DNA of 64,000 nucleotides. Origin: Raja brachyura. Its lineage: Eukaryota. The stretch spans positions 2,232,001 through 2,296,000 of the forward strand of contig OY740804.1 of NCBI GenBank assembly GCA_963514005.1. The letters run 5' to 3'. A program made the position numbers and the translations under genes. This document shows, piece after piece, positions 33,842 through 54,200 of the stretch. The notes under the pieces were generated by a model. The model was not told the origin of the DNA, did not search any database, and saw only the letters and a list, made by a program, of their open reading frames with translations. How positions within the stretch are numbered: position 1 is the first letter of the stretch; every line of letters starts with the position of its first letter.

Positions 33842-34489
33842 CTGGAACAGAAAACAGAGAGCAGCGTGTTAGGATTACGACAAACCGTAATAAGTCAGTG
33901 AATTGGCCTCCACTGCCGCCTGTGGCAGAAAATTCCACAGATTCACATCTCTCTGGGTGAATTTTGTTTCCTCATCCCAGTCCTAAATGGGATACCTCTT
34001 ATTCTTATACTGTGACCCCCTGGCTCTAGGCTCCCCGAAAATTTTTCTTGCATACAGCCTGTCCAATCCCTTAAGAATTCTATAGTTGAATACATCAAGT
34101 GGGACCCATTGGGCCCCGTCCCCTAACACAATAATCCACCACTCACCCATTCCCCCAACACAACCCGTTTCCACCACCCACCCGTTCCCACAACGCAATA
34201 ATCCACCACTCACCCATTCCCCCACAGGAGGCCTAGTCCCCCAACGCAACAAGTTCCCCGATGTAAGATTCCGCCACTCACTTGTTCCCCCAACGCAACC
34301 CATTCCCCCAATGCAATATTCCACCACTCACCCATAGCGCCCAACTGTGCAGGTCATTTTAAACTTTTTTAAAAATGCAATTGCACTACAATTTAACATG
34401 ATGCAGGTGCCACCGACAAGGCCATCTTTTGTTATCCAAATCTAATCATTAATCTTTGCTGTGCTGGGTTCGGCTGGCGTATTCTTCCC

Positions 34490-37400
34490 CTGTGTCACTC
34501 ATGTTATGAGATACTTTGTATCTACGCTCACTAGTTTAACACAAAGCTTCTCATCCCTTTCTCCCTCAGTTTTGTGTTACATATTAAGATGAAGTTACCT
34601 ATGCTGTAATGCTAATAAAGTATTTGGATTTTAATCACTGTGTGTGACCTAAGTTATCCCAACAGCAGAAGCTCGACATGGTGTCAGAGTGTACGGACTC
34701 ACTCCTTGCTTAATTATATTGCTTTTATTTTAGTTTGTTGTTTGTTGTTTTCTCCGGTATATATTACTATGGCCTCTGCTCTCAGAAAACCAGAGATCCC
34801 GTGCAACACCACAAAGACCTTGCAGAACGATGGTGTATATTTGAAGAAGATTTCTAAATTTACATTGAAGCGGCTCAACTTACTGCTGCTCCAGGTGTTC
34901 GAGCATCAATTCTTCTTAATCTAGCAGGCACAGAAGCTGCTCGATGTGCCAGAAGATTTTATTATGAACTAGCTAGGTTTGACCCAGCTAATGTCCAGAT
35001 CGCTCCCGCTGAGTCTTTCTGTGACCCTGACTGCCTACTACGCAAATTCCGACAGTTATGTGAGTTACGCACTAACCTGGTCATGGAGAGGCATTTGTTC
35101 TTTTCTCGAATCCAGAGACAGGGTGAACCAATGGAGATGTATGTCAGTGCCTTGAAGCACGTTGCCAATCGATGCGATTTCAGGGATATATGTGATAGAC
35201 TAGTCCGTGACCGTTTGGTCTATGGTGTCCGCTATGATAAATTATGTGATGAGTTACTGCGGGATGCTGAGCTTACCCTAGAGACTGCTGAAAACCACTG
35301 TCGCATCGCTGAATTGGCTAATGCTCATACAAACGTTTTAGGGCACTCTGCTGGTCGTGAAATTAATGTTGCCGTTCTCCTCAAGTGCCCGACAACTCTA
35401 TCGTGAGACTAATAGACAATTGTTTTAACTGTAGGGGTTCGCATGCTGCTGCTCGTGACCGTTGCCCTGCGCATGGAAAATTATGTTGATTCTGTAACAA
35501 AAGGAATAATTTCTTCAAATGCTGCCGCTTGCAAAGCAACAGAGTTCAAACAAGGCAATCTGTTAATTCACTTGGCCATGAGAACTTGCTCTTGGAACGC
35601 TCTCAACCAACTCCCACAGATAATCAGGCTGCTAGCGAAGGTTTTGACTTGGATGTGCATTCCCGTCAGACTCAATACACAAACAACTAGATCCCAAGGT
35701 CGCTTTGCTCATTAATGGCAAGAACCTTTATCTGAAAGTTGACACAGGGGCCAGATGTAATGTGATCTGTCTAGCTGTGTCGAAAAAGTTACGAAAAACA
35801 GAGACTGTCACACCTACGGCTGCCTCCCTTCTCCCATTTGCAGGAGGTCCAGTGTACCCTATAGGTCAAGTTGAGTTACGCTGCTGTCTTAACTCACGTG
35901 TCCACAACCTGAGTTTCCATGTTGTTCGTGAGGATGTGCCGACGTCTCTGCTGGGTGCCAACGTATGTCAAGACATGGGTCTTATCTCTTTCAGCCCTTC
36001 TGTTTATCATCTGACTCCAACCTGTGACTTTAGCCAACAAATCTGACACAAAATAAAACGTTTTTTGATGACAAGCTAGACAGGTTGCCTGTTAAGTACA
36101 CAATTACCATTAACCCTGAGATCATCCCAGTTGCCGAACAGCACACAAGATTCCCCATGCTATGTGGGACCACGTTCAAAATGAACTCAACAGAATGGTG
36201 TCTCTAGGTGTGATTGCTCCCGTCGCTGACCCCTCGGATTGGTTGTGGCAACGAAGAAGAATAAATATGAAATACAGATTTGTGTGAACCCTAAGGACTT
36301 AAAGCCATTAAATGACCTCACTATCCCATGCGCACTGTGGACAAGATTGCAGCGCAGATGGCTGAAGCAACTGGAGATGCCAAGAGTTCATTCTGGCAGA
36401 TCTCGCTGGAACACAACTCCTCCAAGTTAACCACCTTCAGCACACTGTTCAGGCAATACAGATTACTTTGCATGACTTTTGGCATAAGCTCTGCCAGTGA
36501 ATATTTCAACGAGCTATGGAGCAGTTTGCGGGTTACCCATGCTCCATTGTAGTGGATGACATCCTTGTTGCTGGACAAACTGTTGAAGAACACAATGCTA
36601 ATCTGACAAAGGTCTTGGATCGCGCTAAGGCCATTAACCTCAAGCAAAACCCAGGGTAAGTCAGGTGAAATGCATAGGCCATATGTTCACTAAGGACGGC
36701 CTAAAAACGGATCCGGTGAAAACCAGTGCCATCAACGAGCTCCCAGCACCCACACACGTGCTTGGTCTACAAAGATTCCTTGGCATCGTGAACTACTTGA
36801 GAAAATCTATTCTGGACTTCAGTGAAATATCAGCCCCATTGCGCTGTGGTCCCTGCTTTGCTGCACAGCAAGTATATTGACGCTGTCCATGTCGGGCACC
36901 CAGGCGCTGAAGCCACCATCCTACGGGCAAGAAACATGTTTTACAGGCCTGGCATGGCCGAATACATCACCGAGAATGTGACCTCCTGTGCAGTGTGTAA
37001 CAGCTTGGCACCTCATCAACAAAAGCAACCACTTCTTTCACATCCGGCTCCTGCTCTCCCGTGGTCTACAGTGGCAACTGACATATTTGAATGGCATGGC
37101 AAGCAGTACCTGGTACTTGTCAATTTGTATTCTGGATGGTTTGACATTGATTTTCTTAGCAGCCCCACTTCTCGCGGGGTAGTTTCGAAACTAGCTCGCC
37201 ATTTTGCAGACCACAGAGCTCCGTGCATACTGCTGTCTGATAATGGCAGTCAATTTACCAGCCAACACTTCAAGGAGTTTGCTGCATGTTGGGGTTTTTG
37301 CAACATCACCAGCAGCCTTGAATATCCACAGTCGAATGGACCAGCTGAGTGGGCCGTCAAGAGTACCAAACAGCTCATGGAATGATCGTACAGAGCTAAT

Positions 37401-38309
37401 TCTGACTCCCACTACCCCGTTTTGGGTTCACCAGCTCAACGTTTATTCTCGAGGCAGACCCGAGCCACGGTGCCTGTGGCGGATCAGGCATTGATCCCAC
37501 AGGTGGTTCCACCATCGGAGGTCCAGTCCAGGTTACAAAAAAAGCGTGACATTCAAAAACAGTGGTATGACAAGACAAGTAGACCACTGCCACCGTTTTC
37601 CAAGGGGCAGGTGGTTCATTTGCAGACTGACAATGGCCGTATCTGTGTAATTTCTGGAACAGCTTCTGAGCCACGCTCATATCTGGTCAGTGCCGATGGC
37701 AGCACCTACAGGCATATCAGACAAAATATCCTGCCAGTGAATGAGCCGATTCCACAACCGTACAAGTGTACTTCTGTCTGTTTCTGGCATTGATCCGCCT
37801 ACACCAGCACAACAACCCACTTCGGGAGCGGCTGCTTTGCCGGTGCCGACACCCCCTCCGCCTGTGCTGAAGTCCCCTGTTTCATCACCGGGAATGCTGG
37901 TTCAATCTCTGTCACCCGTGAAGCCACCGGCTCTGTCCGTGGTTGGGAAAAACGGAAATGGTTTTTATCGCACACAAGCTGTCATGTTTGCAAGCCCACC
38001 GTGAAGTACCCGGGCTACGTTTGACTTTCCCCCAGCTTATTATCAATTGCTATCCATGCCTTATTTAGTCAATGGTTTTGTACTGACATTTAATTTTTTT
38101 AAGAGGGAGGATGTAGATCAGTGTCACTCGTGTTATGAGTCATACTTTGTAGCTACGCCCACTAGTTTAACAGAAAGCTTCTCAGCCCTTTCTCCCTCAA
38201 TCTTGAGTTACGTATTAAGATGAAGTTACCTACGCTGTAACGCTAATAAAGTATTTGTATCTTAATCACTGTGTGTGATCTAAGATATTCTAACAGCAGA
38301 AGCTCGACA
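34490..38309 (+). mobile_element. Decayed Gypsy LTR retrotransposon, unit-2 copy
   Basis: Same site and structure; LTRs ~34490-34678 and 38112-38309. Confidence 0.93.
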
Positions 38310-40378
38310 TTCCCTGGAGGACATTTGCTGTGAAGGACTCAGTGTTCTGGGATAGAAACTGTAGCCGGTAGGGCATTGTGATGATCACCAGGGGCGCCGG
38401 GGAGATGGCAGCCCTGCCTGCAGTCTGTTCATTTTTTCATCTTTTTGTTATTTTTTTGTATTTGTTAAAAGTTTGAATAATGTACCTTGGTTTGTTTTAT
38501 GTGGGGGGAGGGGGGATCGGGGGAAACTTTTTTTCAGGTTGTTACCTTCCTGGAGATGTGAGCCATAGCTGGAGCTGGAAGCCGCCTCGAACTGTCGTAA
38601 GTCCCACCGCGGAGAGCGGACTTAACATCGGAGCGGATCCCTTACCTGGGATCGCTCCCACCGCGGCCTGCGGACTTACCATCATGGATTCGCAGTCTCG
38701 GGAGAGGCAAGTCGGGAGCTCCAATGCCACAGAAGGTTCGACCAGCCCCGACACGAGATTGGATCGCTCGGCGCGGGGGAGCTGAACGCGTCTACGCGGG
38801 TGGCCCAAACGCCACCGGCTACAGGATTCAAGATCATCCCGTCAACGGAGGGCTCGAGGCCCACGACCGAGGGAGAACAAAAGGGAAGGACTTGAACTTT
38901 ATTTCGCCTTCCATCACAGTGAGGGATGTGTAGCAGTCACTGTGGTGGATGTTCATTTTAAAATGTGTTTTTAAGTCTGTTGCTTTTAATTGTATGACTG
39001 ACCTGGCCAGTGAAATTCCTCGCATGTTGCAAAACATATTTGGCGAATAAAATCTGATTCTGATTCTTCTGATTCTGATAACTGCCTAACTGACAGTGTA
39101 GATTTGAAGAAATCCAACTTTTAAATGTAACTTTAAAACATTTAAATATCCCCCTCTGCGTCCCTCTCCTTACAACAATATACAAACACTTTCATAGCTT
39201 GTGTATTGACAGCAGAGATCCCATTGTTAAGTCATTTTCAGTTTTTGGAATGTTCACGGCAGCTTATGTAATTAAGATCCCATTGTGATTGGACAACTGT
39301 GGGATGCCATTGTGACATCGCTGGAAGAGTCTCCCTCTCAAAGGCAGTTATTATTCTCAAAATAAGAATCTGCAAAATCTGCAAAATCTTCTAATCTTCT
39401 AAGAATCTGCAAAATCCCGGAGACAATCATTCCCATCACCCATTCCCCAAACGTAACCCATTCGACCAACGCAATATTCCACCACTCACCCATAGCCCCC
39501 AACTGCGCAAGTGCGGCTCATTGCCCCTCATCCCCAACACTTCCTGCCCCTCCCTCTTCTCTCCCCTCACCTCCTCCCCTCCTCCACTCCTCTTTCACCG
39601 CTCCCTCCTGCTCCTTTCCCCTACCCTCAGCCCCTCCCTACCCTCAGTCAGTCCCTCACACCCCCCATAACTCCTCTCCCCTCCCTACCCTCCTGACCCA
39701 TTGGGCTTTGTCTCCCAAACTCTACTGCTGCGCCACCGTGACCACCTATTTATTAAATGTTATCTATGGGTATGGTGTTTCCAAGCCTATTCTGCTGCTG
39801 CAGGTAACCATTTAATTGTTCCATTGCCGGTACATACGACAATTAAACAATCTTGACTGTAGACTCTTGACACCTGAGACCATGTGATTCACCTAACTTC
39901 ACTGACAAACTTCCTCTCTTGCTCGGTTCTGTTGAAGGATTTTCATTCTGAATTGTTGCCTCTGTTGCTCCACCACAGATGCTGCCTGACCCACTGTGTG
40001 TCTCCCACATTCCCCTTTATTTTTGTTCCTGTTCTCAACATCTGCAGACTCCTGATTTTCCACATGTTCTTCCGTCCCTGTATGGTCATGACCAATAATG
40101 GACACAGCTCATAGAACACGGTGATGTTGCCCGTAGTGAGCAGGAGTTGCACAAAGTTCACACCCAACTCAAAGCTGGCGCACAAAGAATCACTCACACC
40201 GGCCTTCTTCAGGGCAGGCAGAAGAGAGTTTATTTCCATTAAAGTCCATTTACAGGGTCAGTTCTCCTCACTGCATGCGATCCGAAGGGCATGTTTCCCT
40301 GCTTTAACTCTGAACTAAACTAAACTAAACTAAACTAAACTAAACTTTGCAAGGGCCCTGCTGAATCAGTGGGAGGTT

Positions 40379-40912
40379 TCACTGGATTGTCAGCCGGGCC
40401 AATTCTTCACATTCCCTATCACGAAAGGTGGTCCAGACACAGGAATATGTCCCCTCATCTTTCTCTTTTACACCTGTCAGGAGCAATGAGCCGTCAAATT
40501 CAGGAAAGGGATCTCGATGCATGAACTCCCAGCGGACATCATGGCCCTGATATAGGTAAGGTATTCTAGTATGATTCATGGCAATTTCAGCACCATCTTT
40601 TCTCCATTTAACTACTCTGAGAGATTCGTAATCTTTGGATACTTTACAGGGCAGCGTAATAGAACCACCCAGAGATGCAACGAGCACCTTCATGTTAATC
40701 GATGATAGGTGATGACTGTATGTATCAGAATCTGTCTCGTTCGTGCATCTTGAAATCTGTTTAACGTTGACTTGCCGAGGAGCCCGTGCGTTCCACCCGG
40801 GCAAGTTTGCTTCCTCTCCCCATTCTCTGGCGATCGGACCTGTTCCAGTTCCGGAGACTTGCCACACCATCTCCACAAGGACCATGAATCCTATCCGTCT
40901 CTGCAGTCCCAT
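40379..40912 (-). CDS. Ig V-type paralogue 1, unit-2 copy (177 aa)
   Basis: Translation identical to 11294-11827; AATAAA 40229-40234 (minus). Confidence 0.88.
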   Translation of the reverse strand: MGLQRRIGFMVLVEMVWQVSGTGTGPIAREWGEEANLPGWNARAPRQVNVKQISRCTNETDSDTYSHHLSSINMKVLVASLGGSITLPCKVSKDYESLRVVKWRKDGAEIAMNHTRIPYLYQGHDVRWEFMHRDPFPEFDGSLLLTGVKEKDEGTYSCVWTTFRDRECEELARLTIQ

Positions 40913-42165
40913 GTTCCTGTGGGTTAAACAACCTTATTGCAACTCAGTAGGATTCATGATGACATTCTCTGAACCCGCCCAGAGTTGGGGAATCGAGAAC
41001 CAGAGGACATCTGTTTAAGGTGAGGGGGGGAAAGATTTAATGGGAAACTGAGGGGTGACTGTTTTACACAAAGGGTGGAGGGTGTTTGGAACGAGCTGCC
41101 GGAAGATGTAGTTGAGGCAGGTACTATCACAATGATTAAGAAACAGTTAGACAGGTACATTGATAGGGCAGGATTAGAGGGGTAAGGGCCAAACGCAGGC
41201 AGGTGGGTCTAGTTTTGATGGGGCAAGTTGGTGGGCGCGGGCAAGTTGGTGGGCGCGGGCAAGTTGGGCCGAAGGTCTCGCTGTATGACTCTATGACTCC
41301 ATCACTTGTCCCACCCCGGTCATTCCTCCTTCTCCCTGGTCCTGTCTAGCAGAAGGTACAGAAGCTTGAAAGCGCGCACCACCAGACTCAGGAACAGCTT
41401 CTTCCCCTCTGTTATCAGGCTTCTGAACTGGGGGAACAGTGAACAGAGACAATCCCACCCCCATCACTCACAGACACTTGAAGGATCCACAGGGTGGCTA
41501 CCAGCTCCTTTTATACCTACTGCCGGCTTCTCCTGACCTTCATTGCCTGCGCTCCCGTACATTCAACCAATCACTGCCTCCCACGGAGCATTGGCGGGAG
41601 CCAGCCGCGACCTCTCCACCCTCTGCCAACTGTGTCCTTGCATCAGCCGTTAACGTTTAACAAGACCAACGTCATCCCAGCTGCCAGCGGCCAACCAGGC
41701 GCCCCACACATCCTGCTTGTGTCTCCACCACGTCTCGCTCTGGCCAACCATCGCAGTTGAGGCAGAAACTATCCCAAGGTTTAAGAAACAGTTAGACAGG
41801 AACAGGTATAGGTTAGATTTGGGGTACACGAAGAAGGGTCTCGGCCCGAAACGTTGCCTATCTCCTTCGCTCCATAGATGCTGCTGCACCCGCTGAGTTT
41901 CTCCAGCATTTTGTGTACTCTCGATTTTCCAGCATCTGCAGTTCCTTCTTAAACACATAGGTTATTGGATGAGTATGGACCAAACATGGACAGATGGGAC
42001 TAGTGTAGCTGGGACATGTTGGCCAGTGTGGGCAAGTTGGGCTGAAGGGCCTGTTTCCACACTGTATCACCCTGTGACTATTACACTATGACATTAAATA
42101 AATAATGTTTATAAAATGAAACTCCACATAAATCTCATCTTCTCCTCTGGTTGTATACACAACAC

Positions 42166-43357
42166 TCATTGACTGCAGCAGATAAAATGAATGTCACACT
42201 GGTGGTACCAGGGCACCTCTGGAAAATTTTCTTCTCAAGATGTGATTGAGAAGACTATGTAACATGGAACAGTACAGCACAGGATCAGGCCCTTCGGCCC
42301 ACAATGTCCGTGCTGCACATGATGCCAAGTTAATCTAATCTCCTCTGCCTGCATGTGATCCATAATCTCTGTTCCCCGCATATCCATGAGATGTTTTAGA
42401 TAAAGCCTCTATTGTAACTATTGTATCTGCCTCCACCACCCACAGCAGCGGGTTCCAGGCACCCACAACCCTCTGTGCCTCGCGGCTGAGGCTACATTTA
42501 GATCCCAATGTTTAAGAAACAGTGAGTCAGGTACATGGATAGGACAGGTTTGGAGGGATATGTACCAAACTGAATGTTCTCGAGAGAGAGAGTTAGATTT
42601 AGCTCTTAGTGCTAATGCAATCGAGGGATATGGGGAGAAAGCAGGAACGGGGCACTGATTTAGGATGATCAGCCATGATCATTGTTGAATGGCTGTGCTG
42701 GCTCGAAGGGCTGAATGGCCTACTCCTGCACCAATTTTCATTGTTTCTATGTTTCTACACACTCCCAATGAGGGTCGAAACTGGACTCTAATCAGCAGCC
42801 CCAACAGTGCAAGAGGCCAATGTAAGGGAGGCTCAGTGAGGCAGCAGTTGAGCTGTTGCCTTACAGCACTAGAGACCCGGGTTCAATCCTGACTGTGGGT
42901 ACTGTCTGTACGGTGGTTGTACGTTTTCCCTATGACCGTGTGGGTTTCCTCCGGGTGCTACAGTTTCCTGACAGATTTCAAAGATGTGCAGGTTTGTAGG
43001 TTAATTGGCTTCAGTAAATTGTCCCTTGCGTGTAGGTTAGAACTTGTGTACAGGCGATCACTCTAAACAAATCTAAACTAAACTCGTCAACTCGACTCAA
43101 CTCAGCTAAAGGCAACTCCATGACACTTAATTTTGCTGCTCAGACCTGTTAAAATATTCTGGATTGGAACAAGTAGGGGCAGTTCAGTTTGACCTGGGAT
43201 GCAAATAATAATGGTTCCGACTGTTAATGTTGAGGAGGGATTTCAATGCGCTGATCAAAGGATAAACTCCCTCTTTCCATCTTGTTCCACTAAAGTCATC
43301 AACATCTAGAGACCACAACATGGCTCCTCTACAGTTGTTGGTCATCAGCCACTGAGC
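42166..43357 (-). pseudogene. Chitinase relic, unit-2 copy
   Basis: Exon 43219-43357 (AQWLMTNNCRGAMLWSLDVDDF) and CBM14 relic ~42166-42237. Confidence 0.78.
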
Positions 43358-44604
43358 CTGGGGAAAAGGAAGGAAAACCATGACTTGAAAGTGTCTTTTG
43401 TTGATGAGCCTTTTAGGCAATAAAGCACACGGATATAATATGTAAAAAGCAAAATAATTCAATAAATGAGAGAGCACAATACTAGTGTGTAAAGCCAACA
43501 TCCTTAGTGCAACCAAAGACAGTCCATAGACATTCATCGTTGACCTCATTGTCGTGTCGTGTTCTAGTTGTTGGGAAGGAATTATGGATCCAATCACTGC
43601 CTCCCACGGGGCATTGGCTGGAGCCAGCCGCGACCAATCCCAACGCACCGCCGGCTCAGATTGAGTATAAACTGTGAAACCAGCGCAGGTGCCAGGGCTG
43701 TGGTGGTGACGTGGCGTGGCTGGGACATCCAGTCCGAATGTTGGCCGGAGCGAGACGTGGTGGAGACACAAGCAGGATGTGTGGGGCGCCTGGTTGGCCG
43801 CTGGCAGCTGGGATGGCGTTGTTCTTGTTAAACGTTAACGGCTGATGCAAGGACACGTTTGGCAGAGGGTGGAGAGGTCAATGAGGGTCTGGAGACACCG
43901 GGAGAAGGTATAAAAGGGGCGAGCAATGGCAGGAGATGGAAGTAAGACCGGCCTCGTCAGCCTGTGTGGAGACTCCGGAGCTGGTAACCACCCCCTGTGG
44001 ATCCTTCAAGTGTCTGTGAGTGATGGGGGTGGGATTGTCTCTGTTCTCTGTTCCCCAGTTCAGAAGCCTGATAGCAGAGGGGAAGAAGCTGTTCCTGAGT
44101 CTGGTGGTGCGTGCTTTCAAGCTTCTGTACCTTCTGCTAGACAGGACCAGGGAGAAGGAGGAATGACCGGGGTGGGACAAGTCTTTGATTTTTTTGGTTG
44201 TAGATGGAGTCGCTGGTGGGGAGTGTGGTCCGTGTGATGGACTGGGCTCCATCCACAACTCTGCAATTTCTTGTGGTCTTGGGCTCAGAGCTGTTCCCAA
44301 ACCAAACTGTGATGCAACCTGACAGTCTGCTCTCCGTGGTGCATCTGTAGAAGCTTGTGAGAGACATTAGAGACTTGCCGTATTTCCTTGGTCTCCAAGG
44401 AGGTAGATGCATTGGTGTGTCTCCTTGGCTGCCACTTTAATGTTGTTGGTCAACGACAGGTCAAAGCAACTTAAAATAAACCAGGCAGGAGCTGAAGAGG
44501 CTGCACAGCGACATTGCCCAGTGTGGTGGCAGCAGCTTCAGAGAATGTCATCATGAATCCTACTGAGTTGCAATAATGTGACCCATTGTTTCACCCACAG
44601 GAGC

Positions 44605-45114
44605 ATGGGACTGCAGAGATGGATAGGATTCATAGTCCTTGTGGAGATGGTGTGGCAAGTCTCTGGAACTGGAACAGGTCCGATCTCCAGAGAATGGGGA
44701 GAGGAAGCAAACTTGCCCGGGTGGAACGCACGGGTTCCTCGGCAAGTCAACAAACAAGAAACTCCAGAATGCGGTGTTAAGCCAGATTTGACCAAGATGA
44801 CGGAGATGACGGCACGCAAGGGTGGTTCTGCTACGCTACCCTGTGAAGTACCCACAGGGAAGGATGGACCCACGCATTTTGTGGTCACCTGGAGGAAAGG
44901 GAAGGGGACACTGGGCGTGTTTACTAAAGGGAAAGGTCCAATCTATCCAGGGGGTGCCGGCCGCTGGAAGTTCATGAAACCAAACGTGGCTGAGACACGG
45001 GATGCCTCGTTGATCGTCACGGGTTTACGCGAGACTGATGCTGGGATGTATTCCTGTGCTTGGTTCACTAGCCAAGGGGAATGTAGACTAAATGTCAAGC
45101 TGGCAGTGAAGTGA
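44605..45114 (+). CDS. Ig V-type paralogue 2, unit-2 copy (169 aa)
   Basis: ATG 44605 after acceptor; leader, RVPR, V-set motifs; AATAAA 45546-45551. Confidence 0.9.
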   Translation: MGLQRWIGFIVLVEMVWQVSGTGTGPISREWGEEANLPGWNARVPRQVNKQETPECGVKPDLTKMTEMTARKGGSATLPCEVPTGKDGPTHFVVTWRKGKGTLGVFTKGKGPIYPGGAGRWKFMKPNVAETRDASLIVTGLRETDAGMYSCAWFTSQGECRLNVKLAVK

Positions 45115-45845
45115 AACCTCCCACTGATTCAGCACAGACCCCTCCAAGTGTCAGGAGCAACAGGCAGTGGCAGGTCAGCACAAACACAATAACATCCTTC
45201 ATTATAAACTTGACACACTTAGGCCAACAACAGCATTATATATTGTAGTCACTGAATTCATCATGAGGGGAATAGAGGGGTGGACACTAAGCATCTTTTA
45301 CCTGGGGTACGGGAATCAAGAACCAAGGGACATACATTTAAGGTGAGAGGGGCAAGATTTAATAGGAACCTGAGGGGCAATATTTTCACTCATGGGGTGG
45401 TGGGTTTATGGAACTGTCCGGTGGGGCGGGAACAATAACAATATTTAATACACACTTGGTACAGGGAAAGGTTTAGGGGGATATGGGGTGAACGCAGTGC
45501 AATGGGACAGACCCTGCTTGCACGGGTAAATGTACCATTAATGGAAATAAACTCTGTTGAAGACAGCCGGTGGTGTGAGTGATTCTTTGTACGCCAGCAT
45601 TGAAGTTGGGTGTGAACTTTGTTCAACTCTTGCTCACTACGGGCAGCATCGCCGGGTTCTATGAGCTGTGTCCATTATTGGTCATGACCACACGGGGACG
45701 GAACAACATGTGGAAAATCAGGAGTCTGCAGATGTTGCGAACAGGGACAAAAGTAAAGGGGAATGTTTTTCAGGAACAAAACAGGAACAAAAGTAAAGGC
45801 AGATGACACAACAGTAGGCGGGTTTGCAGATAGTGGAGTTGGTTG

Positions 45846-46338
45846 ATTGGCACCAGACTGATTCCTGGGATGTCAGGACTTTCATATGAGGAAAGATTGG
45901 ATAGACTCGGTTTGTACTCGATGGAATTTAGAAGATTGAGGGGGGATCTTATAGAAACCTACAAAATTCTTAAGGGGTTGGACAAGCTAGATGCTGGAAG
46001 ATTGTTCCCGATGTTGGGGGAGTCCAGAACAAGGGGTCGCAGTCTAAGGATAAGGGGGAATTCCTTTAGGACCGAAATGAGGAAAACATTCTTTACACAG
46101 AGAGTGGTGAGTCTCTGGAATTCTCTGCCACAGAAGGTAGTTGAGGCCAGTTCATTGGCTATATTTAAGAGGGCGTTAGATGTGGCACTTGTGGCTAAAG
46201 GGATCAGGGGGTATGGAGAGAAGGCAGGTACGGGATACTGAGTTGGATGATCAGCCATGATCACATTGAATGGCGGTGCAGGCTCGAAGGGCCGAATGGC
46301 CTACTCCTGCACCTATTTTCTATGTTTCTATGTTTCTA
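45846..46338 (+). mobile_element. 5'-truncated CR1 insertion specific to unit 2
   Basis: RLIPGMSGLSYEERL...RVVSLWNSLP, (TTCTATGT)n tail, TSD TGGTTG 45840-45845 and 46339-46344; empty site at ~16723 in unit 1. Confidence 0.88.
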
Positions 46339-47167
46339 TGGTTGTGAAAAATTGCAGCAGGATATTGAAATATTGGCCAAGTGGGCTGAGGAACGGTTGA
46401 TGGAATTTACTACAGAGTAATGTGAGGTGTTGTATTTGGGGGGAGTCCAACATGTGCAGGACCTACACAGTGAATGGCCCGGCTCTGGGGAGTGTTGTAG
46501 AGCAGAGGGATCTATGAGTGAAGGTGCATGGTTCCTTGAAGATGCAGTCGCAGGTGGGTAGGGTGGTCAAAAAGGCTTTTAGCACATTGGCCTTCATCAG
46601 TCAGAGTATTCAGTATGGAGGTTGGGAGGTCATCTTGCAGCTGCAGAAGATTGGTGAGGCCACATTTAGATCCCAATGTTTCATAAACAGTTGGACAGGT
46701 ACATGGATAGGACAGGTTTGGAGGGATATGGAACAAACACAGGCAGGTGAGACTATTGTAGCTGGGGCATGTTGGCCAGTGTGGGCAAGTTGGGCTGAAG
46801 GGCCTGTTTCCACGCTGTATCACTCTGTGACTACTACACTATGACATTAAATAAATAATGATTATAAAATGAAACTCCACATAAATCTCACCTTCTCCTC
46901 TGGCTGTATACACAGCACACTAATTGACTGCAGCAGATACAATGAATGTCACACTGGTGGTACCAGGGCACCTCTGGAAAATGTTCTTCTCAAGATGTGA
47001 TTGAGAAGACGGTGTAACATAGAACATGGAACAGTACAGCCCAGGAACAGGCCCTTCGGCCCCCAATGTCCGTGCTGAACATGATCACCATGGAAAATTG
47101 GTTCTGACTGTCTACCCTATCTGTATCTCATACTTTTATAACTTGTGCAAGAGGCCAATGCAAGGGA

Positions 47168-50100
47168 CCCCATCCACGCTACTAGTTACATCCTCGAAAA
47201 ATTCCACAAGATTCGTCAGACATGATTTACCTTTCGTAAATCCATGCTGACTTTGTCCAATGATTTCACCACTTTCCAAATGTGCTGCTATCCCATCTTT
47301 AATAACTGACTCTAGCAGTTTCCCCACTACCGATGTTAGACTAACTGGTCTGTAATTCCCCGTTTTCTCTCTCCCCCCCTTCTTAAAAAGAGGGGTTACG
47401 TTTGCTACCCGCCAATCCTCAGGAACTACTCCAGAATCTAAAGAGTTTTGAAAGATTATCACTAATGCATCCACTATTTCCAGAGCTATTTCCTTAAGTA
47501 CTCTGGGATGCAGCCTATCTGGCCCTGGGGATTTATCGGCCTTTAATCCATTCAATTTACCCAACACCACTTCCCGACTAACCTGGATTTCACTCAAGTA
47601 CTCCTTTGACCCGCGGTCCCCTGCTATTTCCGGCAGATTATTTATGTCTTCCTTAGTGAAGACGGAACCAAAGTAGTTATTCAATTGGTCAGCCATATCC
47701 TTGTTCCCCATGATCAACTCACCTGTTTCTGACTGCAAGGGACCTACATTTGTTTTAACTAATCTCTTTCTCTTCACATATCTGTAAAAACTTTTGCAGT
47801 CAGTTTTTATGTTCCCTGCCAGTTTTCTTTCATAATCTATTTTTCCTTTCCTAATCAAGCCCTTTGTCCTTCTCTGCTGGTCTCTGAATTTCTCCCAGTC
47901 CTCTGGTATGCTGCTTTTTCTGGCTACTTTGTACGCATCATCCTTTGCTTTGATACTATCCCTGATTTCCCTTGTTATCCACGGATGCACTACCTTCCCT
48001 GATCTATTCTTTTGCCAAATTGGGATGAACAATTTTTGTAGTTCATCCATGCAGTCTTTAAATGTCTTCCATTGTGTATCCACCGTCAACCCTTTTAGAA
48101 TTGATTGCCAGTCAATATTGGCCAATTCACGTCTCATACCCTCAAAGTTACCTTTCCTTAAGTTCAGAACCATTGTTTCTGAATTAACAATGTCACTCTC
48201 CATCCTAATGAAGAACTCGACCATATTATGGTCACTCTTGCCCAAGGGGGCACGCACAATAAGACTCCTAACTAACCCTTCCTCATTACTCAATACCCAG
48301 TCTAAAATAGCCTGCTCTCTCGTTGGTTCCTCTACATGTTGATTTAGATAACTATCCCTCATACTTTCCAAAAAATCCTCTTCCTCAGCGCCTGCCAATT
48401 TGATTCACCCAATCTATATGTGGATTGAAGTCACCCATTATAACTGTTTTGCCTTTGTCGCACGCATTTCTAATTTCCTGTTTTATACCATCCCCAACTT
48501 CACTACTACTGTTAGGTGGCCTGTACACAACTCCCACTAGCGTTTTCTGCCCCTTATTGTTTCGCAGCTCTACCCATACCGATTCCACATGCTCCAAGCT
48601 AATGTCCTTCCTTTCCATTGCGTTAATCTCCTCTCTAACCAGCAACGCTACCCCACCTCCTTTTCCTTTCTCTCTATCCCTCCTGAATATTGAATACCCC
48701 TGGATGTTCAGCTCCCAGCCTTGGTCACCCTGGAGCCATGTCTCCGTGATCCCAACTATATCATACTCATTAATAGCTATCTGCACGTTCAACTCATCCA
48801 CCTTATTACGAATACTCCTTGCATTGAGACACAAAGCCTTCAGACTTGTTTTTACATCCCTTTTTTTCCCTATATCGTTGGTGCCAATATGCACCACGAC
48901 AACTGGCTGTTCACCCTCCCCCTCCAGAATGTTCTGCAGCCGTTCAGTAACATCCCTGACCTTTGCAGCAGGGAGGCAACATACCATCCTGGAGTCTCTT
49001 TTGCGTCCGCAGAAACGCCTATCTATTCCCCTGACAATTGAATCCCCTATTACAATAGCCCTTCCCCTCTTTTTTCCCCCATCATGTGCTGCAGAGCCAC
49101 CCATGGTGCCATGAACGTGGCTGCTGCTGCATTCCCCTGATGAGCCATCTCCCTCAACAGTATCCAAAATGGTAAACCTGTTGAGTAGGGAGATGACCGC
49201 AGGGGACTCCTGCACTATCTGCCTACAGCTTTGCTGGCTATTGGCCACCCGCTCCCTTTCTGTCCTCTTACCTTTTACCTGTGGCGTGACCAACTTGCTG
49301 TATGTGCTGTCCACAACTTTCTCTGCGTCGTGGATGCTCCAGTATGAATCCAGCCGCAGCTCCAATCGTTCAATGCTTTTTTAATTTTTTTAAATTTCAA
49401 AATAGACTTTATTAAAGTAATTAATATATACAGCACATCAACCGTGCGAAAAATCCATCCGACATTTTCGGAGGCACTATAAATTGCTCCATACAGTCTA
49501 TACACATTTTTTCAAATTTCGCGAATCGATCCCCCACCCGTGCCACTCATGTGGCCACTGGCATGGGTTATCTTCCTTTATTTTGAGGGGCGTCCCCACC
49601 ATACCGTGCCCCCCATGTCCAGCAGCGGAAGGACCTTAGACTGTGGCCCTCCCCCACCGAGCCTTGGCGTTGGCTGCACAGGGAGCTTCAGTGCGCCCCT
49701 CAGCACGTACTCCTGCAGTCTGCAGTGGGCCAGTCGGCAACATTCCCCGACGGACATCTCGCTCTGCTGGGTGGTGAACAAAGCTCGGGCAGACCAGAGA
49801 GCGTCTTTCACCGAGTTGATAACCCTCCAGCAGCACTTGATATCAGTCTCTGAATGTGTCCCTGGGAACAGTCCGTAAATCACAGAGTCCTCTGTGACGG
49901 AGCTGTTTGGAATAAAGCGTACCAGGGACCCTTGCATTTTTCTCCAGACTCTTTGGGCAAATCCACACTCTGCAAAGAGGTGGGCAACCGTCTCCACTCC
50001 ATAGCAGCCGTCCCGAGGGCAGCATGCAATGCGGTCTGCCAGGAGCTGCAGCTGGACACACTTCCTGCAAACGTAGTCACCAGGGACACCGACCATATCC

Positions 50101-50367
50101 CTGATCTCCCACATGTTGCAGGCTGAGCAAGGCACGGGACCAATCTCCACTGACACCTTACTCTATTAAATATATATATTTTTTAAATTTATTTTTTATT
50201 AAACACAAAACTTTATTCTTTAAACTTTACTAATAAATACTAATAAATATTGAATCCCTAACACCCAGAATCCTTAGCTCCCAGAATCCTTAAACCTGTA
50301 GGCAGAAATGTAGAAATGTAAATCCCGGGTTGCAGCCAATCAGCTGCTTCCTCTGGTCCTCTTCATC
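47168..50367 (-). mobile_element. CR1 LINE 5' portion (ORF1 zinc finger and esterase, APE endonuclease, start of RT), 3'-truncated
   Basis: CSACNMWE...CRKC; VIGDSIVR...VHIGTND (SGNH esterase); CLNARSIRNK, GITETW, MGDFN, SDHN (APE); KSPGPD, NYRPVSLTS, QHGF (RT). Only in unit 2. Confidence 0.92.
49377..50026 (-). mobile_element. 3' end of an L1/Tx1-type LINE nested in CR1 ORF1
   Basis: CPRDGC...ETVAHLFAECGFAQRVW zinc knuckle, A-rich tail, TSD CAATGC at 49371-49376 and 50027-50032. Confidence 0.8.
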
Positions 50368-53300
50368 AGCCTCACGTGCGGCACTTTATCAAAGGCTTCC
50401 AAAGGGGACTTCCGAACCAGGGTCACAGTTTAAGAATAAGGGGTTAGGCCATTTCGGACTGAGATGAGGAAAGAAATAACCACCCAGAGAGTTCTGAATC
50501 TGTGGAATTCTCAGACACAGAAGGCAGTGGAGGCCAATTCACTGGATGGTTTCAAGAGAGAGTTAGATTTAGCTCTTGGGGCTAACGGAATCAAGGGATA
50601 TGAGCAAAAAGCAGGAACGGGGCACTGATTTTGGATGATCAGCCATGATCATATTGAATGGCGGTGCTGGCTCGAAGGGCCAAATGGATTACTCCTCGGC
50701 CTATTTTCTATGTTTCTGTGACTCGCAGGAGCCACAACGAGGATGTGTGGGGCACGTTGTCAACTGTTGGGACATCTTTGATGACCACAATCTCGTTAGT
50801 AATTAACGGCGGCTGACTAGCGACCACACAGAGACAATTCTGGGCACCACTCTGTGAACACCAATATTTGCTTGACACCAGTTTGTATTGGGGTAGCATA
50901 GCTGTAGAGTTACTGCCTCACAGTGCCAGACACCCGGGTTCGATTATGACTACGGGTGCTGACTACTCGTGACAGCGGCCAGAATCACCAGAAGAGAAAT
51001 ACCAATTACTAGAGGACGTCAGACAGACAGTTCGAGTAGATCATCAGAACAATTTTCCAAGGGTGGGAATGTAAAGGACTAGTGGGCAGAGCTTTAAGGC
51101 GAGAGGGGCAAAGTTTAAATGAGATGTGTGCGGCAAGTTTTTTTTACACGGAGAGTGATGGGGCCCTGGAACGCGCTGCCAGGGGCGGTGGTGGAGACAG
51201 ATACGATAGTGGTGTTTAAGAGGCTTTTAGATTGGCACATGGATATGTAGGGAATGGAGGGATACGGGTCACGTGCAGGCAGAGGGGATTAGTTTAACCT
51301 GTCTGCAGGTGAATGGTGGAATCTGGGAGAAATTGAAAACCATATAGAGAGAGTAAAGTTGGATTAGATTAGTGTAGATGGATGGCTGTTGGATAGCATG
51401 GACACAAAGGTTCTGTGTCTCTCTGAAAACAAGATTGTGCAAAAGCTTGAAAGGTAAGTAACTGCATGAGACTGTGACATTCATACTGATGTGATCCTTC
51501 CCTCTGGAAGGCGACTCCGGACTGTCAAAGCTCAACAGCTTTTTTTCCCCATGAGCAGTAGCTCTACTCAGCAACCAGAAATCTGTAGCCTCCTTGTGCT
51601 CTGGTATTTTATGTCATTCTTCACATGTTTAAATTGTAATGTTTCATTCCTAATTGTTAACTGCATATCGTGTTGTTACTTGCGAGCAAAGCACCGAGTC
51701 AAATTCTTGTATATATACATACTTGGCTAATTACAGTTATTCAATTCAATTCATAGCAACAGAAATTGCTGACTTTAATTGATAAACTGTTTATCAGGAT
51801 GAGGGGAATTTTGAAGGATGAGGGGGTGGGGACCTCATAGAAACTTACCGATTAGTTTAAAGACCTGGGCAGAGTGGATGTGGAGAGGATGTTGCCATTA
51901 TTTACGGAGTCCAGGACCAGAGGGCACAGCCTCAGAATAAAAGTAAGTACCTTTAGGAAGGAGATGTGACCTGGACAGGTTGAGTGAGTGGGCAGATGCG
52001 TGGCAGATGCAGTATAATATAGATAAATGTGAGGTTATCCACTTTGGCGGCAAAAAAAGGGGGCAGATTATTAACTCAATGGGGTTAGGTTAGGTAAGAG
52101 GGAGGTGCAGCGAGACATGGGCGTCCTTGTACACCGGTCACTGAAGGTTGGCGTGCAGGTACAGCAGGCAGTGAAGAAAGCTAATGGAATGTTGGCCTTC
52201 ATAACAAGAGGATTTCAGTATAGGAGTAAAGAGGTTCTTCTGCAGTTGTACAGGGCTCTGGTGAGACCACATCTGGAGTATTGTGTACAGTTTTGGTCTC
52301 CTAATTTGAGGAAGGACATCCTTGTGATTGAGGCAGTGCAGCGTAGGTTCACGAGACTGATCACTGGGATGGCGGGACTGTCATATGAGGAAAGATTGAA
52401 AAGACTAGGCTTGTATTCACTTAAGTTTAGAAGGATGATGGGGAATCTTATAGAAACATATAAAATTATAAAAGGACTGGACAAGCTAGATGCAGGAAAA
52501 TGTTCCCAATGTTGGGCGAGTCCAGAACCAGGGGCCACAGTCTTAGAATAATGGGGAAGCCATTTGAGATTGAGGTGAGAAAAAACGTTTTCACCCTGAG
52601 AGTTGAGAATTTGTGGAATTCCCTGCCACAGAGGCCAGTGGAGGCCAAGTCACTGGATTGATTTAAGAGAGAGTTAGATAGAGCTCTAGGGGCTAGTGGA
52701 GTCAAGGTATATGGGGAGAAGGCAGGCACGGGTTATTGATTGGGGATAATCAGCCATGATCACAATGAAACGTGGTGCTTGCTTGAAGGGCTGAATGGCC
52801 TCCTCCTGCACCTATTTTCTACGTTTCTATGTTACTATGTTTCTATGAGATGAGGAGGAATTTCCTTAGTCAGAGGGTGGTGAATCTGTGGAATTCATTG
52901 CCACAGACGGCCGTGGAGGCCAAGTCATTGAGTATTTTGAAAGTGGAAATTGACAGATTCTTGATTAGTGCGGATGTCAGAGATTATGGGGAGGAGGCAG
53001 GAGAATGGGGTTGAGAGGGAGAGACAGATCAGCCATGTAGACTTGATGGGGCAAATGGCCTAATTCTGATCCTGGAACTGATGTACATGAACAGACACAA
53101 AGTACGCTGTTATATGCTTGAAATTATGACTTTATTTTATTGTTTTAACAGCAACAATTATCTTTGTGATGAACAATTGATGGTGGAAGTTCCGAGTTGT
53201 TTGTCGACCACAGTCTGCAACAGAAAGATCATCTTAGATTTCTCAAAACCAGGAAGGATGTCTACACATCAGATCAAAAACAATATCTTAAGTACATATT

Positions 53301-53464
53301 TATATTTAAGTTTCTAGTTTAGTTTATTATTGTCACGTGTACCGAGGTGAAGTGAAAAGTTTAATGTGTGCGTGCTATCCTGTCAGCGGAAAGACTACAC
53401 ATGATTACAGTCGAGCCGCCCACAGTGTACAGATACAGGATGAAGGGGTTAACGTTCTGTGCGT

Positions 53465-54200
53465 GGAGCACTAGGACCCAGCAGAGTCGTCACTACTGAT
53501 GGGTCTTTCCTATAGGAGTGTGGGTTTGGGGGGGCACTAGGACCCAGCAGAGTCATCATGAAAATTATAGAGCTCTCTTTGATCTTTGGTCATCACCACT
53601 GATGGGTCTTCCCTATGGAGGGGAGAAGGGGGGCACTAGGACCCAGCAGAGTCATCACCACTGATGGGTCTTCCATATAGGAGTGTGGGTTTGGGGGGGC
53701 ATTAGGACCCAGCAGAGTCATCACCACTGATGGGTCTTCCCTATAGACGGGAGGGGGGGCACTAGGACCCAGCAGAGTCATCACCCCTGATGGGTCTTCC
53801 CTATAGAGGGGAGGGGGGGCACTAGGACCCAGCAGAGTCATCACCCCTGATGGGTCTTCCCTAAAGAGTGGAGGGGGGGCACTAGGACCCAGCAGAGTCA
53901 TCACCACTGATGGGTCTTCCCTAAAGAGGGGAGGGGGGGCACTAGGACCCAGCAGAGTCATCACCCCTGATGGGTCTTCCCGACAGGAGTGTGGGTTTGG
54001 GGGGGCATTAGGACCCAGCAGAGTCATCACCACTGATGGGTCTTCCCTATAGAGGGGAGGGGGGGCACTAGGACCCAGCAGAGTCATCACCCCTGATAGG
54101 TCTTCCCTATAGAGGGGAGGGGGGGCTCTAGGACCCAGCAGTCATCACTACTGATCGGTATTCCCTATAGGGGAGTGGGAGGGGGGGGGGGGCACTAGAT
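53465..54200 (+). repeat. ~60-bp G-rich minisatellite, unit-2 copy (~12 units)
   Basis: Same unit, different copy number and variant order. Confidence 0.93.

What the first reader, a model, noticed from the sequence alone, without database searches (positions are those of the whole stretch)
44743..45114. Strong excess of replacement changes between the two copies of Ig paralogue 2
Hand comparison of the mature domain after QVN (unit 1 vs unit 2) gives 17 replacements (A>P, M>T, K>E, S>G, I>V, V>G, P>A, D>G, R>K, V>M, D>K, M>V, V>A, D>G, V>L, S>R, C>S) and an in-frame 3-codon indel (ETR), but only one synonymous change (GGA/GGT). Most cluster between the C'-C'' region and strands D-E; several alter charge (net about +5 vs +8). 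The canonical Cys/Trp and the extra Cys pair are unchanged. Paralogue 1 is identical between units. Inference: positive selection on a ligand-binding surface, or conversion from a paralogue-3-like donor (the unit-2 copy shares GRWKFM..NV..TRDASL with paralogue 3).
Basis: partly seen in the sequence, partly recalled or inferred. Interest (0 to 1): 0.82.

Follow-up and report, generated by a model that had tools for sequence, protein, structure and literature searches.

The report
Fast-evolving duplicate of skate Ig gene
Two neighbouring copies of a small secreted antibody-like (Ig V-domain) gene in a skate genome differ almost only by amino-acid-changing mutations, and contigs from other skate samples show this reflects fast, probably adaptive change in one copy, a common pattern in immune-type gene families.

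Summary
The copies at 15497-15997 (unit 1) and 44605-45114 (unit 2) differ in the mature domain by 17 replacements (18 nonsynonymous changes), one synonymous change and a 9-bp in-frame indel.

- **Window alone is marginal.** dN/dS is 5-7, with p = 0.02-0.09.
- **Flanks support it.** The nonsynonymous rate is 6.7% against 2.8% in the non-coding flanks (p = 0.003). The synonymous rate (1.2%) is no higher than the flanks, so the exon is not older than them.
- **Other samples support it.** Contigs from four public runs show both exon types, long and short, under three organism labels. This rules out assembly error.
- **The short type is the fast one.** Across all contigs the mature domain has 36 nonsynonymous and 4 synonymous variant states. 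The states confined to the short (unit-1) type are 28 to 0.
- **Unit 1 is the derived copy.** Outgroups show that unit 2 keeps ancestral residues, so its likeness to paralogue 3 is shared ancestry, not conversion.

Changes cluster in residues 118-142 and avoid the fold core. Positive selection is the best reading (about 0.6). The ligand is unknown.

The scan has already noted this gene family in this window and in the next one.

The parts
44605..45114 (+). Paralogue 2, unit-2 copy ('long' type). Single coding exon of 169 codons plus stop: signal peptide and conserved leader (codons 1-49), then a V-set Ig domain (codons 50-169).
   Evidence: ORF and translation. Pfam V-set 36.5 bits against a cut-off of 26. 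AF2 model with Ig domain pLDDT 80-92. Contigs with 0 differences in runs X1 and X2.
44743..45114 (+).
   Evidence: 18 nonsynonymous and 2 synonymous changes (one in the QVN Val codon) plus the 9-bp indel against unit 1.
44953..45030 (+). Dense cluster of differences: 12 substitutions and the indel in about 75 bp. It covers the C''-D loop, D strand, D-E loop and E-F turn (residues 117-142).
   Evidence: 10 of the 17 replacements fall in residues 118-142 (p = 7e-4).
44992..45000 (+). 9 bp (codons E130, T131, R132) present in unit 2 and absent in unit 1. The deletion is the derived state.
   Evidence: ETR, VKR or DTR is present in Leucoraja P0001 and P0002 and in P3. 'Left out 9' contigs occur in X1, X2 and X10.
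15497..15997 (+). Paralogue 2, unit-1 copy ('short' type), 166 codons plus stop. This is the derived, fast-evolving copy.
   Evidence: The AF2 model keeps the fold.
15845..15913 (+). The unit-1 counterpart of the difference cluster.
11294..11827 (-). Paralogue 1, unit-1 copy (177 aa). It lies inside a 719-bp tract (11121-11839) that is identical to unit 2.
40379..40912 (-). Paralogue 1, unit-2 copy, identical to the unit-1 copy.
18178..18849 (+). Paralogue 3, found in unit 1 only. It lacks 14 nt including the stop codon and reads on for about 60 codons. Used here as an outgroup.
47167..50367 (-). LINE-type insertion (endonuclease and reverse-transcriptase ORFs) that takes the place of paralogue 3 in unit 2.
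28514..59727 (.). Tandem unit 2 of the chitinase/Ig array. Unit 1 is 1-28513 and unit 3 starts at 59728. The units match at about 98.3%.

Best explanation
**What it is.** The two sequences are tandem duplicates of a gene for a small secreted protein. The protein has a signal peptide, a roughly 28-residue conserved and disordered leader, and one PVR/nectin-like V-set Ig domain with an extra disulfide pair. The gene belongs to a batoid-specific multigene family that sits inside a tandemly amplified chitinase array.

**What happened.** After the roughly 30-kb unit duplicated, the unit-1 ('short') copy took on many amino-acid replacements and a 3-codon deletion, with essentially no synonymous change. 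The unit-2 ('long') copy stayed close to the ancestral sequence. Replacements concentrate in the C''-D loop, D strand, D-E loop and E-F turn. Further ones lie in A' and in the B-C and F-G loops. The fold core is spared. Short-type copies in other skate samples carry nested subsets of these changes plus their own further replacements, so the change accumulated in steps and is continuing.

**Most likely cause.** This step is inferred, not shown: positive selection remodelled a binding surface of the secreted V domain. On this reading the array now encodes two functionally different P2 proteins, through neofunctionalisation or diversification of specificity, as in other immune-type IgSF families. 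The ligand is unknown. My working guess is an extracellular microbial, dietary or host-receptor target in the tissue where the neighbouring chitinase is secreted.

The sequence pattern, the polarity of change and the presence of both types in other samples are shown. Selection as the cause, and binding as the selected trait, are inferred.
For: 1. The mature domain has 18 nonsynonymous changes to 1 synonymous, omega 5.4-7, p = 0.02-0.045 one-sided.
2. The nonsynonymous rate is 6.7% per site, against 2.8% in 1.5 kb of flanks (Fisher p = 0.003), 1.9% in the 3' flank (p = 0.0004) and 1.7% unit-wide. Synonymous divergence is 1.2%, not above the flanks. The exon is therefore not older than its surroundings.
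3. Logan contigs from four runs show both types under organism labels A, B and D. They give 36 nonsynonymous to 4 synonymous distinct variant states in the mature domain (p = 0.029). States confined to short-type haplotypes are 28 to 0, and 0.768^28 = 6e-4. Thirteen of those are new replacements in the B and D short types.
4. Nested subsets show stepwise accumulation. A core of 44956C, 44960A, 45025G and the deletion is in all short types. 44969G and 44977G are added in A, D and the window. Further private changes occur in each.
5. Polarity by outgroups gives 9-11 changes derived in unit 1 against 2-4 in unit 2. Three-point branch lengths with P3 give dN 0.073 on the unit-1 branch and about 0 on the unit-2 branch, with dS about 0 and 0.03.
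6. Replacements avoid columns conserved in the nine other family members: 2 of 36 against 21.7% expected, p = 0.009. They cluster in residues 118-142 (p = 7e-4).
7. The ORF is intact, the indel is in frame, and AF2 still folds the short type.
8. Paralogue 1 in the same units has a 719-bp identical tract. Homogenisation therefore operates in this array, yet the P2 copies stay different.
Against: - The two window copies alone give only marginal significance: two-sided p = 0.088, and p = 0.12 if the QVN codon is counted.
- The cross-sample counts rest on Logan contigs, not reads. 22 variants were not displayed, organism labels are coded, and contigs may come from further paralogous units. The 28 to 0 count is therefore approximate, and its partition into short-type states was partly made after seeing the data.
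- Five unit-1 states in the cluster (44974G, 44979T, 44986A, 45028A, 45070T in unit-2 coordinates) were not seen in any run.
- S156C gives unit 1 an odd Cys count, which could signal decay.
- The relative-rate asymmetry is not significant on its own (p = 0.06-0.18).
- No RNA run holds the exon, so expression is unproven.
No likelihood branch-site test was possible.
Confidence: 0.6

Rival explanations
1. Patchy gene conversion or ectopic exchange with family members outside the window. On this reading short tracts copied from a diverged relative produced the clustered differences in unit 1, without selection.
For: - Differences are strongly clustered: 12 substitutions and an indel in 65 bp.
- Conversion clearly operates in this array. 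Paralogue 1 has a 719-bp identical tract, and leader dS is 5-25 times lower than mature-domain dS.
- A Logan-derived Leucoraja-like protein (P0158) looks like a mosaic of two P2-like genes.
- Read depth over the leader is about 10 times that of the mature domain, so many potential donors exist.
Against: - No sequence in the window matches any unit-1-specific state over 11 nt or more.
- Paralogues differ at synonymous sites as much as at nonsynonymous ones (dS 0.45-1.1, omega 0.74-1.08). Imported tracts should therefore carry about 25% synonymous differences, but the short lineage shows 0 of 28.
- Short types in other samples carry nested subsets of the changes. This fits stepwise point substitution better than a single tract.
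Confidence: 0.15
2. Relaxed constraint or early decay of the redundant unit-1 copy. On this reading the near-absence of synonymous changes is a chance fluctuation.
For: - Significance from the window alone is marginal.
- Unit 1 gains an unpaired fifth Cys and loses three codons.
- Its AF2 confidence is a little lower around the D-E loop.
- The neighbouring paralogue 3 is decaying or lost.
- There is no evidence of expression.
Against: - Neutral decay gives omega about 1 and a total rate equal to the flanks. Here the nonsynonymous rate is 2.4 times the flanks (p = 0.003).
- There are 28 nonsynonymous and 0 synonymous changes across short-type lineages.
- Changes avoid conserved core columns (p = 0.009).
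- There is no stop or frameshift.
- The short type persists under at least three organism labels.
Confidence: 0.12
3. One reading: the unit-2 copy was converted by a paralogue-3-like donor, which would explain the shared GRWKFM..NV..TRDASL residues.
For: Unit 2 matches P3 at 15 of 20 informative differing nucleotide sites and at the indel. It also shares 15-17 nt exact runs with P3.
Against: - The same states occur in paralogue 1 and in Leucoraja P0001, P0002 and P0003, so they are ancestral.
- Sites where P3 agrees with unit 2 are spread over the whole gene, not confined to a tract.
- Unit 2 and P3 still differ heavily inside the cluster, and overall mature dN is 0.41 and dS 0.50.
- Long-type contigs carrying these states exist in runs X1, X2, X7 and X10.
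Confidence: 0.03
4. Assembly or consensus error in one of two nearly identical repeat units.
For: - The units are 98% identical, and repeats are prone to mis-polishing.
- Five unit-1 states in the cluster were not seen in any of the four runs.
- No run holds more than 78% of the sampled words, so the source individual was probably not examined.
Against: - Both exon types, including the 9-bp deletion and at least 8 of the cluster differences, are present as separate contigs at depth 10-56 in runs X1, X2 and X10.
- Every unit-2 state is seen in at least one run.
- The unit-1 5' block of five differences matches an X1 contig by count.
Confidence: 0.05

Closest known systems
Poliovirus receptor (PVR/CD155/necl-5) and nectin D1 V-domains, with TIGIT and CAR D1 as further structural neighbours
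   Same: These are the best matches by sequence and by structure. phmmer gives E = 4e-9 to PVR D1, with an alignment that spans the C''-D-E-F motifs. The top Foldseek hits are nectin-2, necl-5 and nectin-1 D1, with TM 0.7-0.8 by target and 28-34% identity. NCBI names the Narcine relative 'nectin-1-like'.
   Different: The skate protein is a single V domain that ends right after the G strand. It has no C-type domains, membrane anchor or cytoplasmic tail. It has an extra A-G Cys pair and a conserved N-terminal leader. The FG-loop T(F/Y)P motif, recalled from the literature, is absent.
[quoted passage not shown]
   Same: Both are secreted, germline-encoded V-type Ig proteins in multigene clusters with high sequence diversity. 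Both are linked to chitin biology. The abstracts of those papers report gut expression and polymorphism for VCBPs.
   Different: VCBPs have two V domains fused to a chitin-binding domain in one polypeptide. Here there is one V domain and no chitin-binding module in the ORF. The CBM14 and GH18 exons belong to a neighbouring chitinase gene on the other strand. No homology beyond the V-set fold was shown, and expression is unknown.
Positively selected, tandemly duplicated IgSF families such as CEACAM/PSG (PMC3628338, seen only in a search list and not read here)
   Same: A lineage-specific tandem expansion in which replacement changes exceed silent ones in the ligand-binding N-terminal V domain, while conserved signal or leader exons are homogenised.
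   Different: This is a different clade of V domains in a different taxon. The products here are purely secreted single-domain proteins, and no pathogen or ligand is known.
Toxin/antimicrobial-peptide style genes with a conserved prepro region and a hypervariable mature region (from general knowledge)
   Same: The leader is nearly invariant among paralogues and species, while the mature domain is hypervariable. Contigs of other paralogues join the same leader and 3' UTR to different mature domains (joints 44751 to 45110).
   Different: The mature part is a 120-residue Ig fold, not a short peptide. Cleavage of the leader is not shown.

Membership tests
V-set immunoglobulin domain (Pfam PF07686) | Profile match above Pfam's gathering score | tested here: met
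   36.5 bits (unit 2) and 38.5 bits (unit 1) against a cut-off of 26.
V-set immunoglobulin domain (Pfam PF07686) | Canonical B-strand Cys, C-strand Trp, F-strand Cys and the D-x-G-x-Y-x-C motif | tested here: met
   C80, W96, C151 and the D145-A-G-M-Y-S-C151 motif are invariant across the family.
V-set immunoglobulin domain (Pfam PF07686) | C' and C'' strands present in the fold | tested here: met
   The AF2 model has strands at 101-107 and 111-113, with pLDDT 80-92.
Nectin / nectin-like (PVR) family | N-terminal V domain of the nectin/PVR type | tested here: met
   phmmer E = 4e-9 to PVR D1. The top Foldseek hits are nectin-2, necl-5 and nectin-1 D1.
Nectin / nectin-like (PVR) family | Ectodomain of V-C-C Ig domains followed by a membrane anchor and a cytoplasmic tail | tested here: not met
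   The ORF stops 1 residue after the G strand (169 aa). No further domains or hydrophobic anchor are present.
Nectin / nectin-like (PVR) family | PVR-family signature motifs (A-x6-G in C'-C'', T(F/Y)P in the FG loop). The motif definitions are recalled from the literature, not checked in a paper here. | tested here: inconclusive
   A-x6-G is present in P3 and Leucoraja P0002, but the P2 copies have G at the first position. The FG loop reads F-T-S-Q-G, without T(F/Y)P.
VCBP (variable region-containing chitin-binding protein) | Two V domains plus a chitin-binding domain in one polypeptide | tested here: not met
   There is one V domain and no CBM in the ORF. The CBM14 lies in a chitinase exon on the minus strand.
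Gene pair under positive selection (dN/dS > 1) | Nonsynonymous rate significantly above the synonymous or neutral rate | tested here: met
   Omega is 5.4-7. Within the exon p = 0.02-0.09. Against the flanks p = 0.003. With contigs from four runs the count is 36 to 4 (p = 0.029), and on the short lineage 28 to 0. A likelihood branch-site test was not possible.
Gene pair under positive selection (dN/dS > 1) | The gene is functional: expressed, with an intact ORF and core residues conserved | tested here: inconclusive
   The ORF is intact, the core is spared (p = 0.009) and the fold is kept. No RNA run holds the exon.
Gene-conversion tract | A contiguous tract identical to a donor at both synonymous and nonsynonymous sites, with sharp borders | tested here: not met
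   There is no donor of 11 nt or more in the window for unit-1 states. Unit-2 states have only 15-17 nt runs shared with P3. The P3-like sites are dispersed and also shared with outgroups. Donors outside the window could not be searched.

The most novel reading that the evidence does not exclude
The batoid single-V 'nectin-like' genes could be a vertebrate counterpart of protochordate VCBPs. On this reading they are a germline-diversified set of secreted V domains that is co-amplified, and perhaps co-expressed, with a secreted chitinase. They would act at a mucosal surface on microbes or chitinous material. The long and short P2 types would be kept as functionally distinct variants across species by diversifying selection, while their shared leader is homogenised by gene conversion.
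Probability: 0.12. Interest if true: 0.8.

Novelty: new member of a known kind. Interest (0 to 1): 0.5.

Why it matters
Replacement changes in excess of silent ones between young tandem duplicates are one of the few sequence-only signs that a gene is being actively reshaped. Here the sign marks an uncharacterised family of secreted single-V-domain proteins. The family occurs only in skates and rays, and databases hold it only as automatic predictions.

The result points to a specific surface (C''-D, D strand, D-E loop, E-F turn) as the likely site of specificity. It provides two natural variants, long and short, for binding experiments. It also shows divergence and homogenisation working side by side in one array: paralogue 1 and the leader are homogenised, while the paralogue 2 mature domain diverges.

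As a phenomenon it is ordinary for immune-type IgSF clusters. Its value is as an entry point to the function of this family.

Tried and rejected
No Leucoraja or Rhinoraja DNA could be fetched, so no multi-species codon alignment or likelihood branch-site test was possible. Outgroup polarity rests on protein sequences, on the window's own paralogues and on Logan contigs.
- **The look-up of sequencing runs** found no RNA holder, so expression is untested. All runs were kept as contigs, so depths are not copy numbers. 22 variants and 102 contig pieces were not displayed.
- **Conversion from P3 into unit 2** was considered and rejected.
- **'Mature exon escaped homogenisation and is simply older'** was rejected, because its synonymous divergence (1.2%) is not above that of the flanks.
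- **A single complex mutational event for the cluster** was rejected, because other samples carry nested intermediate haplotypes.
- **Protein searches.** The word-based search and the exhaustive profile search found only Leucoraja and Rhinoraja members plus one Narcine relative. The ESM Atlas gave only generic V-set clusters.
- **Literature searches** found no paper on this family and none in the held library on positive selection in PVR D1.
- **Model coordinates** are not exported, so three-dimensional clustering of the sites could only be judged from strand and loop assignment.

Full report
**Setting**

The window contains a tandem array with a unit of about 29-31 kb. Unit 1 is 1-28513, unit 2 is 28514-59727 and unit 3 starts at 59728. 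Collinear blocks differ by 1.7% on average.

Each unit carries exons of a GH18 chitinase with a CBM14 chitin-binding module on the minus strand, together with retroelement remains. It also carries small single-exon genes for secreted V-set Ig proteins:
- Paralogue 1 (P1) lies on the minus strand at 11294-11827 and 40379-40912.
- Paralogue 2 (P2) lies on the plus strand at 15497-15997 and 44605-45114.
- Paralogue 3 (P3) lies on the plus strand from 18178 and is present only in unit 1.

In unit 2 the syntenic stretch for P3 is replaced by a LINE with endonuclease and reverse-transcriptase ORFs, at 47167-50367.

The best protein matches are uncharacterised proteins of the skates Leucoraja erinacea (78% identity) and Rhinoraja longicauda. 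Earlier notes of this scan also call the genome skate-like.

**Checking the observation**

There are 17 amino-acid replacements, which are 18 nonsynonymous changes. There is one synonymous change after QVN (GGA/GGT) and a 9-bp in-frame indel (codons ETR at 44992-45000, absent from unit 1).

One point was missed. The Val codon of QVN, which lies inside the stated interval, also differs synonymously (15640/44748).

The other points hold:
- The canonical Cys, Trp and Cys and the extra Cys pair are unchanged, although unit 1 gains a fifth Cys.
- Net charge is +8 against +5.
- P1 is identical between the units.

**Is it more than chance?**

From the two copies alone the case is marginal. For the mature domain S = 81.3, N = 269.7, Sd = 1 and Nd = 18. 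This gives pN/pS = 5.4 and ML omega = 6.9. One-sided Fisher p is 0.042 and two-sided p is 0.088. The value rises to 0.12 if the QVN codon is counted. A test that allows for the mutation spectrum gives p = 0.020.

The non-coding flanks give a stronger reference. Substitutions run at 3.6% in 771 bp upstream and 1.9% in 731 bp downstream. The nonsynonymous rate of 6.7% exceeds the pooled flanks (p = 0.003) and the 3' flank (p = 0.0004). The synonymous rate (1.2%) does not exceed them.

The exon is therefore not older than its surroundings. This excludes simple escape from homogenisation. It also argues against import of a diverged tract, because the paralogues differ at synonymous sites as much as at nonsynonymous ones (mature-domain dS 0.45-1.1, omega 0.74-1.08).

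**Independent sequences**

The look-up of sequencing runs returned coded runs kept as Logan contigs, none of them RNA. I laid four runs (X1, X2, X7 and X10, with organism labels A to D) on 44400-45300 at 85% likeness or more.

Two exon types appear as separate contigs in A, B and D:
- The long type is like unit 2. It is identical to it over 127-275 bp pieces in X1 and X2.
- The short type has the same 9-bp deletion as unit 1. Its depth is 10.3 of 25.6, 11.1 of 24.7 and 55.9 of 225.8 in the three runs.

Only the long type was seen in the shallow run X7. The difference between the copies is therefore not an assembly artefact, and both types are shared across organism labels.

The short types carry nested subsets of the unit-1 changes:
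- A core of 44956C, 44960A, 45025G and the deletion is present in all.
- 44969G and 44977G are added in A, D and the window.
- Each has further changes of its own.

This indicates stepwise accumulation rather than a single event.

I classified every displayed variant in the unit-2 reading frame. The mature domain shows 40 distinct variant states, of which 36 are nonsynonymous and 4 synonymous (binomial p = 0.029 against 0.768). The states confined to short-type haplotypes are 28 nonsynonymous and 0 synonymous (0.768^28 = 6e-4). Thirteen of them are new replacements in the B and D short types, including six in a 43-bp stretch of strand B and the B-C loop in B. Long types differ among samples by fewer changes of mixed kind.

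These counts carry caveats:
- They come from contigs, not reads.
- 22 variants were not shown.
- The organism labels are coded.
- The split into short and long was partly made after seeing the data.
- Five unit-1 states in the cluster were not seen in any run.

**Polarity**

At the sites that differ, P3 and P1 (nucleotides) and the Leucoraja P2-like and P3 proteins mostly agree with unit 2. Between 9 and 11 replacements and the deletion are derived in unit 1, and 2 to 4 are derived in unit 2. Read data confirm two of the unit-2-derived states: I10 in the signal peptide and A129.

Three-point branch lengths with P3 as outgroup put dN = 0.073 on the unit-1 branch and about 0 on the unit-2 branch. 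With the more distant P1 as outgroup this asymmetry does not show up (dN about 0.03 on the unit-1 branch and 0.04 on the unit-2 branch, from the pairwise values), probably because P1 is close to saturated. The asymmetry is only a trend by a relative-rate count (p = 0.06-0.18).

Those residues are ancestral states, also present in Leucoraja. The sites where P3 agrees with unit 2 are spread along the gene. The exact runs shared by unit 2 and P3 across the differing sites are only 15-17 nt, and no other sequence in the window matches any unit-1-specific state over 11 nt or more. Conversion from a P3-like donor into unit 2 is therefore not supported. Conversion into unit 1 from a donor outside the window cannot be excluded, but it fits poorly with the absence of synonymous differences.

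**Where the changes lie**

AF2 models place the Ig domain at residues 50-169, with pLDDT 80-92. Residues 1-49 (signal peptide and leader) come out disordered. The strands are A' 66-70, B 75-78, C 93-98, C' 101-107, C'' 111-113, D 121-123, E 136-139, F 147-155 and G 158-168.

Ten of the 17 replacements and the indel fall in residues 118-142, which cover the C''-D loop, D strand, D-E loop and E-F turn (p = 7e-4). Others lie in A', in the B-C and C-C' loops and in the F-G loop. The C, C' and F strands are almost untouched.

Only 2 of the 36 nonsynonymous states hit columns conserved in the nine other family members, where 21.7% would be expected (p = 0.009). The short type still folds in silico, and the helical turn of the D-E loop is lost. 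This pattern fits continued constraint on the fold with rapid change of surface loops. It does not fit decay.

**What the protein is**

By sequence and by structure the domain is closest to the D1 V domains of PVR/necl-5 and the nectins. phmmer gives E = 4e-9. The top Foldseek hits have 28-34% identity and TM 0.7-0.8 by target.

It differs from nectins in being a lone secreted V domain with a conserved leader and an extra Cys pair.

An exhaustive profile search of 1.84 billion representatives found a single 50% cluster for the family. It also found one more distant relative, a 218-residue 'nectin-1-like' protein of the electric ray Narcine bancroftii with the same layout. The family therefore looks batoid-specific. 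I found no paper that describes it.

The leader is nearly invariant among paralogues and species. Its synonymous divergence (0.03-0.17) is far below that of the mature domain. In the runs the leader's depth is about ten times that of the mature domain, and some contigs join the leader directly to the 3' UTR region of other paralogues. Many members therefore share the leader and the UTR around different mature domains.

**Conclusion**

The best reading (about 0.6) is positive selection on the unit-1 (short) copy after tandem duplication. On this reading selection remodelled a surface centred on the D strand and its adjoining loops of a secreted PVR-like V domain, while the unit-2 copy kept the ancestral form.

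The rivals are:
- conversion from unseen family members (0.15);
- relaxed constraint plus chance (0.12);
- assembly error (0.05);
- conversion from P3 into unit 2 (0.03).

The ligand and the site of expression are unknown. The link to chitinase and the analogy to VCBPs (PMC2632668, PMC4757023) are leads only.

No outgroup DNA and no likelihood branch-site test were therefore available.

Noticed in passing
window 11121-11839 and 40206-40924: Paralogue 1 and 173 bp of its 3' side are perfectly identical between units over 719 bp. The stretch is bracketed by 1.8-3.5% divergence, so about 18 differences would be expected. This looks like a recent gene-conversion tract, or very strong constraint, and is the opposite of paralogue 2.
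   Followed up: partly
window 18178-18849; 47167-50367: Paralogue 3 exists only in unit 1. There it lacks 14 nt that encode the last G-strand residues and the stop codon (compare Leucoraja P0003), and it reads on for about 60 codons. In unit 2 its place is taken by a LINE with endonuclease and RT ORFs. P3 therefore appears to be decaying or lost in this array.
   Followed up: partly
window 44605-44751 (leader) versus 44752-45111, and the same parts of P1 and P3: Leader codons 1-49 are nearly invariant among paralogues and between skate species. Their dS is 0.03-0.17, against 0.45-1.1 in the mature domain. In public runs the leader's contig depth is about 10 times that of the mature domain, and joints 44751 to 45110 link the leader to the 3' UTR of other family members. 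This points to concerted evolution, or DNA-level constraint, of the leader and UTR around hypervariable mature domains.
   Followed up: partly
window 44439-44510: A 72-bp segment just upstream of the unit-2 P2 gene is absent from unit 1. Both forms, with and without it, occur in all four runs laid (joint 44437 to 44511).
   Followed up: no
window 44731-44751 (codons 43-49): The leader ends in R-V-P-R followed by Q-V-N. This fits a minimal R-x-x-R proprotein-convertase site just before the mature domain. P-R-Q-V is conserved even in the Narcine relative. Cleavage is untested.
   Followed up: no
window 53589-54187 versus 22560-22983: A 60-bp minisatellite is expanded in unit 2 relative to unit 1. 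Its minus-strand ORF reads as repeated 20-residue units rich in Pro.
   Followed up: no
Leucoraja proteins P0001, P0157 and P0158 (no locus DNA): In Leucoraja two P2-like genes (LOC129708940 and LOC129708942) differ by a single residue. A Logan-derived protein (P0158) looks like a mosaic of P0001-like and P0002-like segments. This hints at recombination among P2-like genes in that lineage.
   Followed up: no
window 43926-43994 and 14888-14956: An upstream ORF starting MAGD matches the N-terminal extension in NCBI's Leucoraja gene models. Including it would bury the signal peptide 31 residues inside the protein. The Rhinoraja model starts at MGLQ instead, which looks like the more plausible start.
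   Followed up: no
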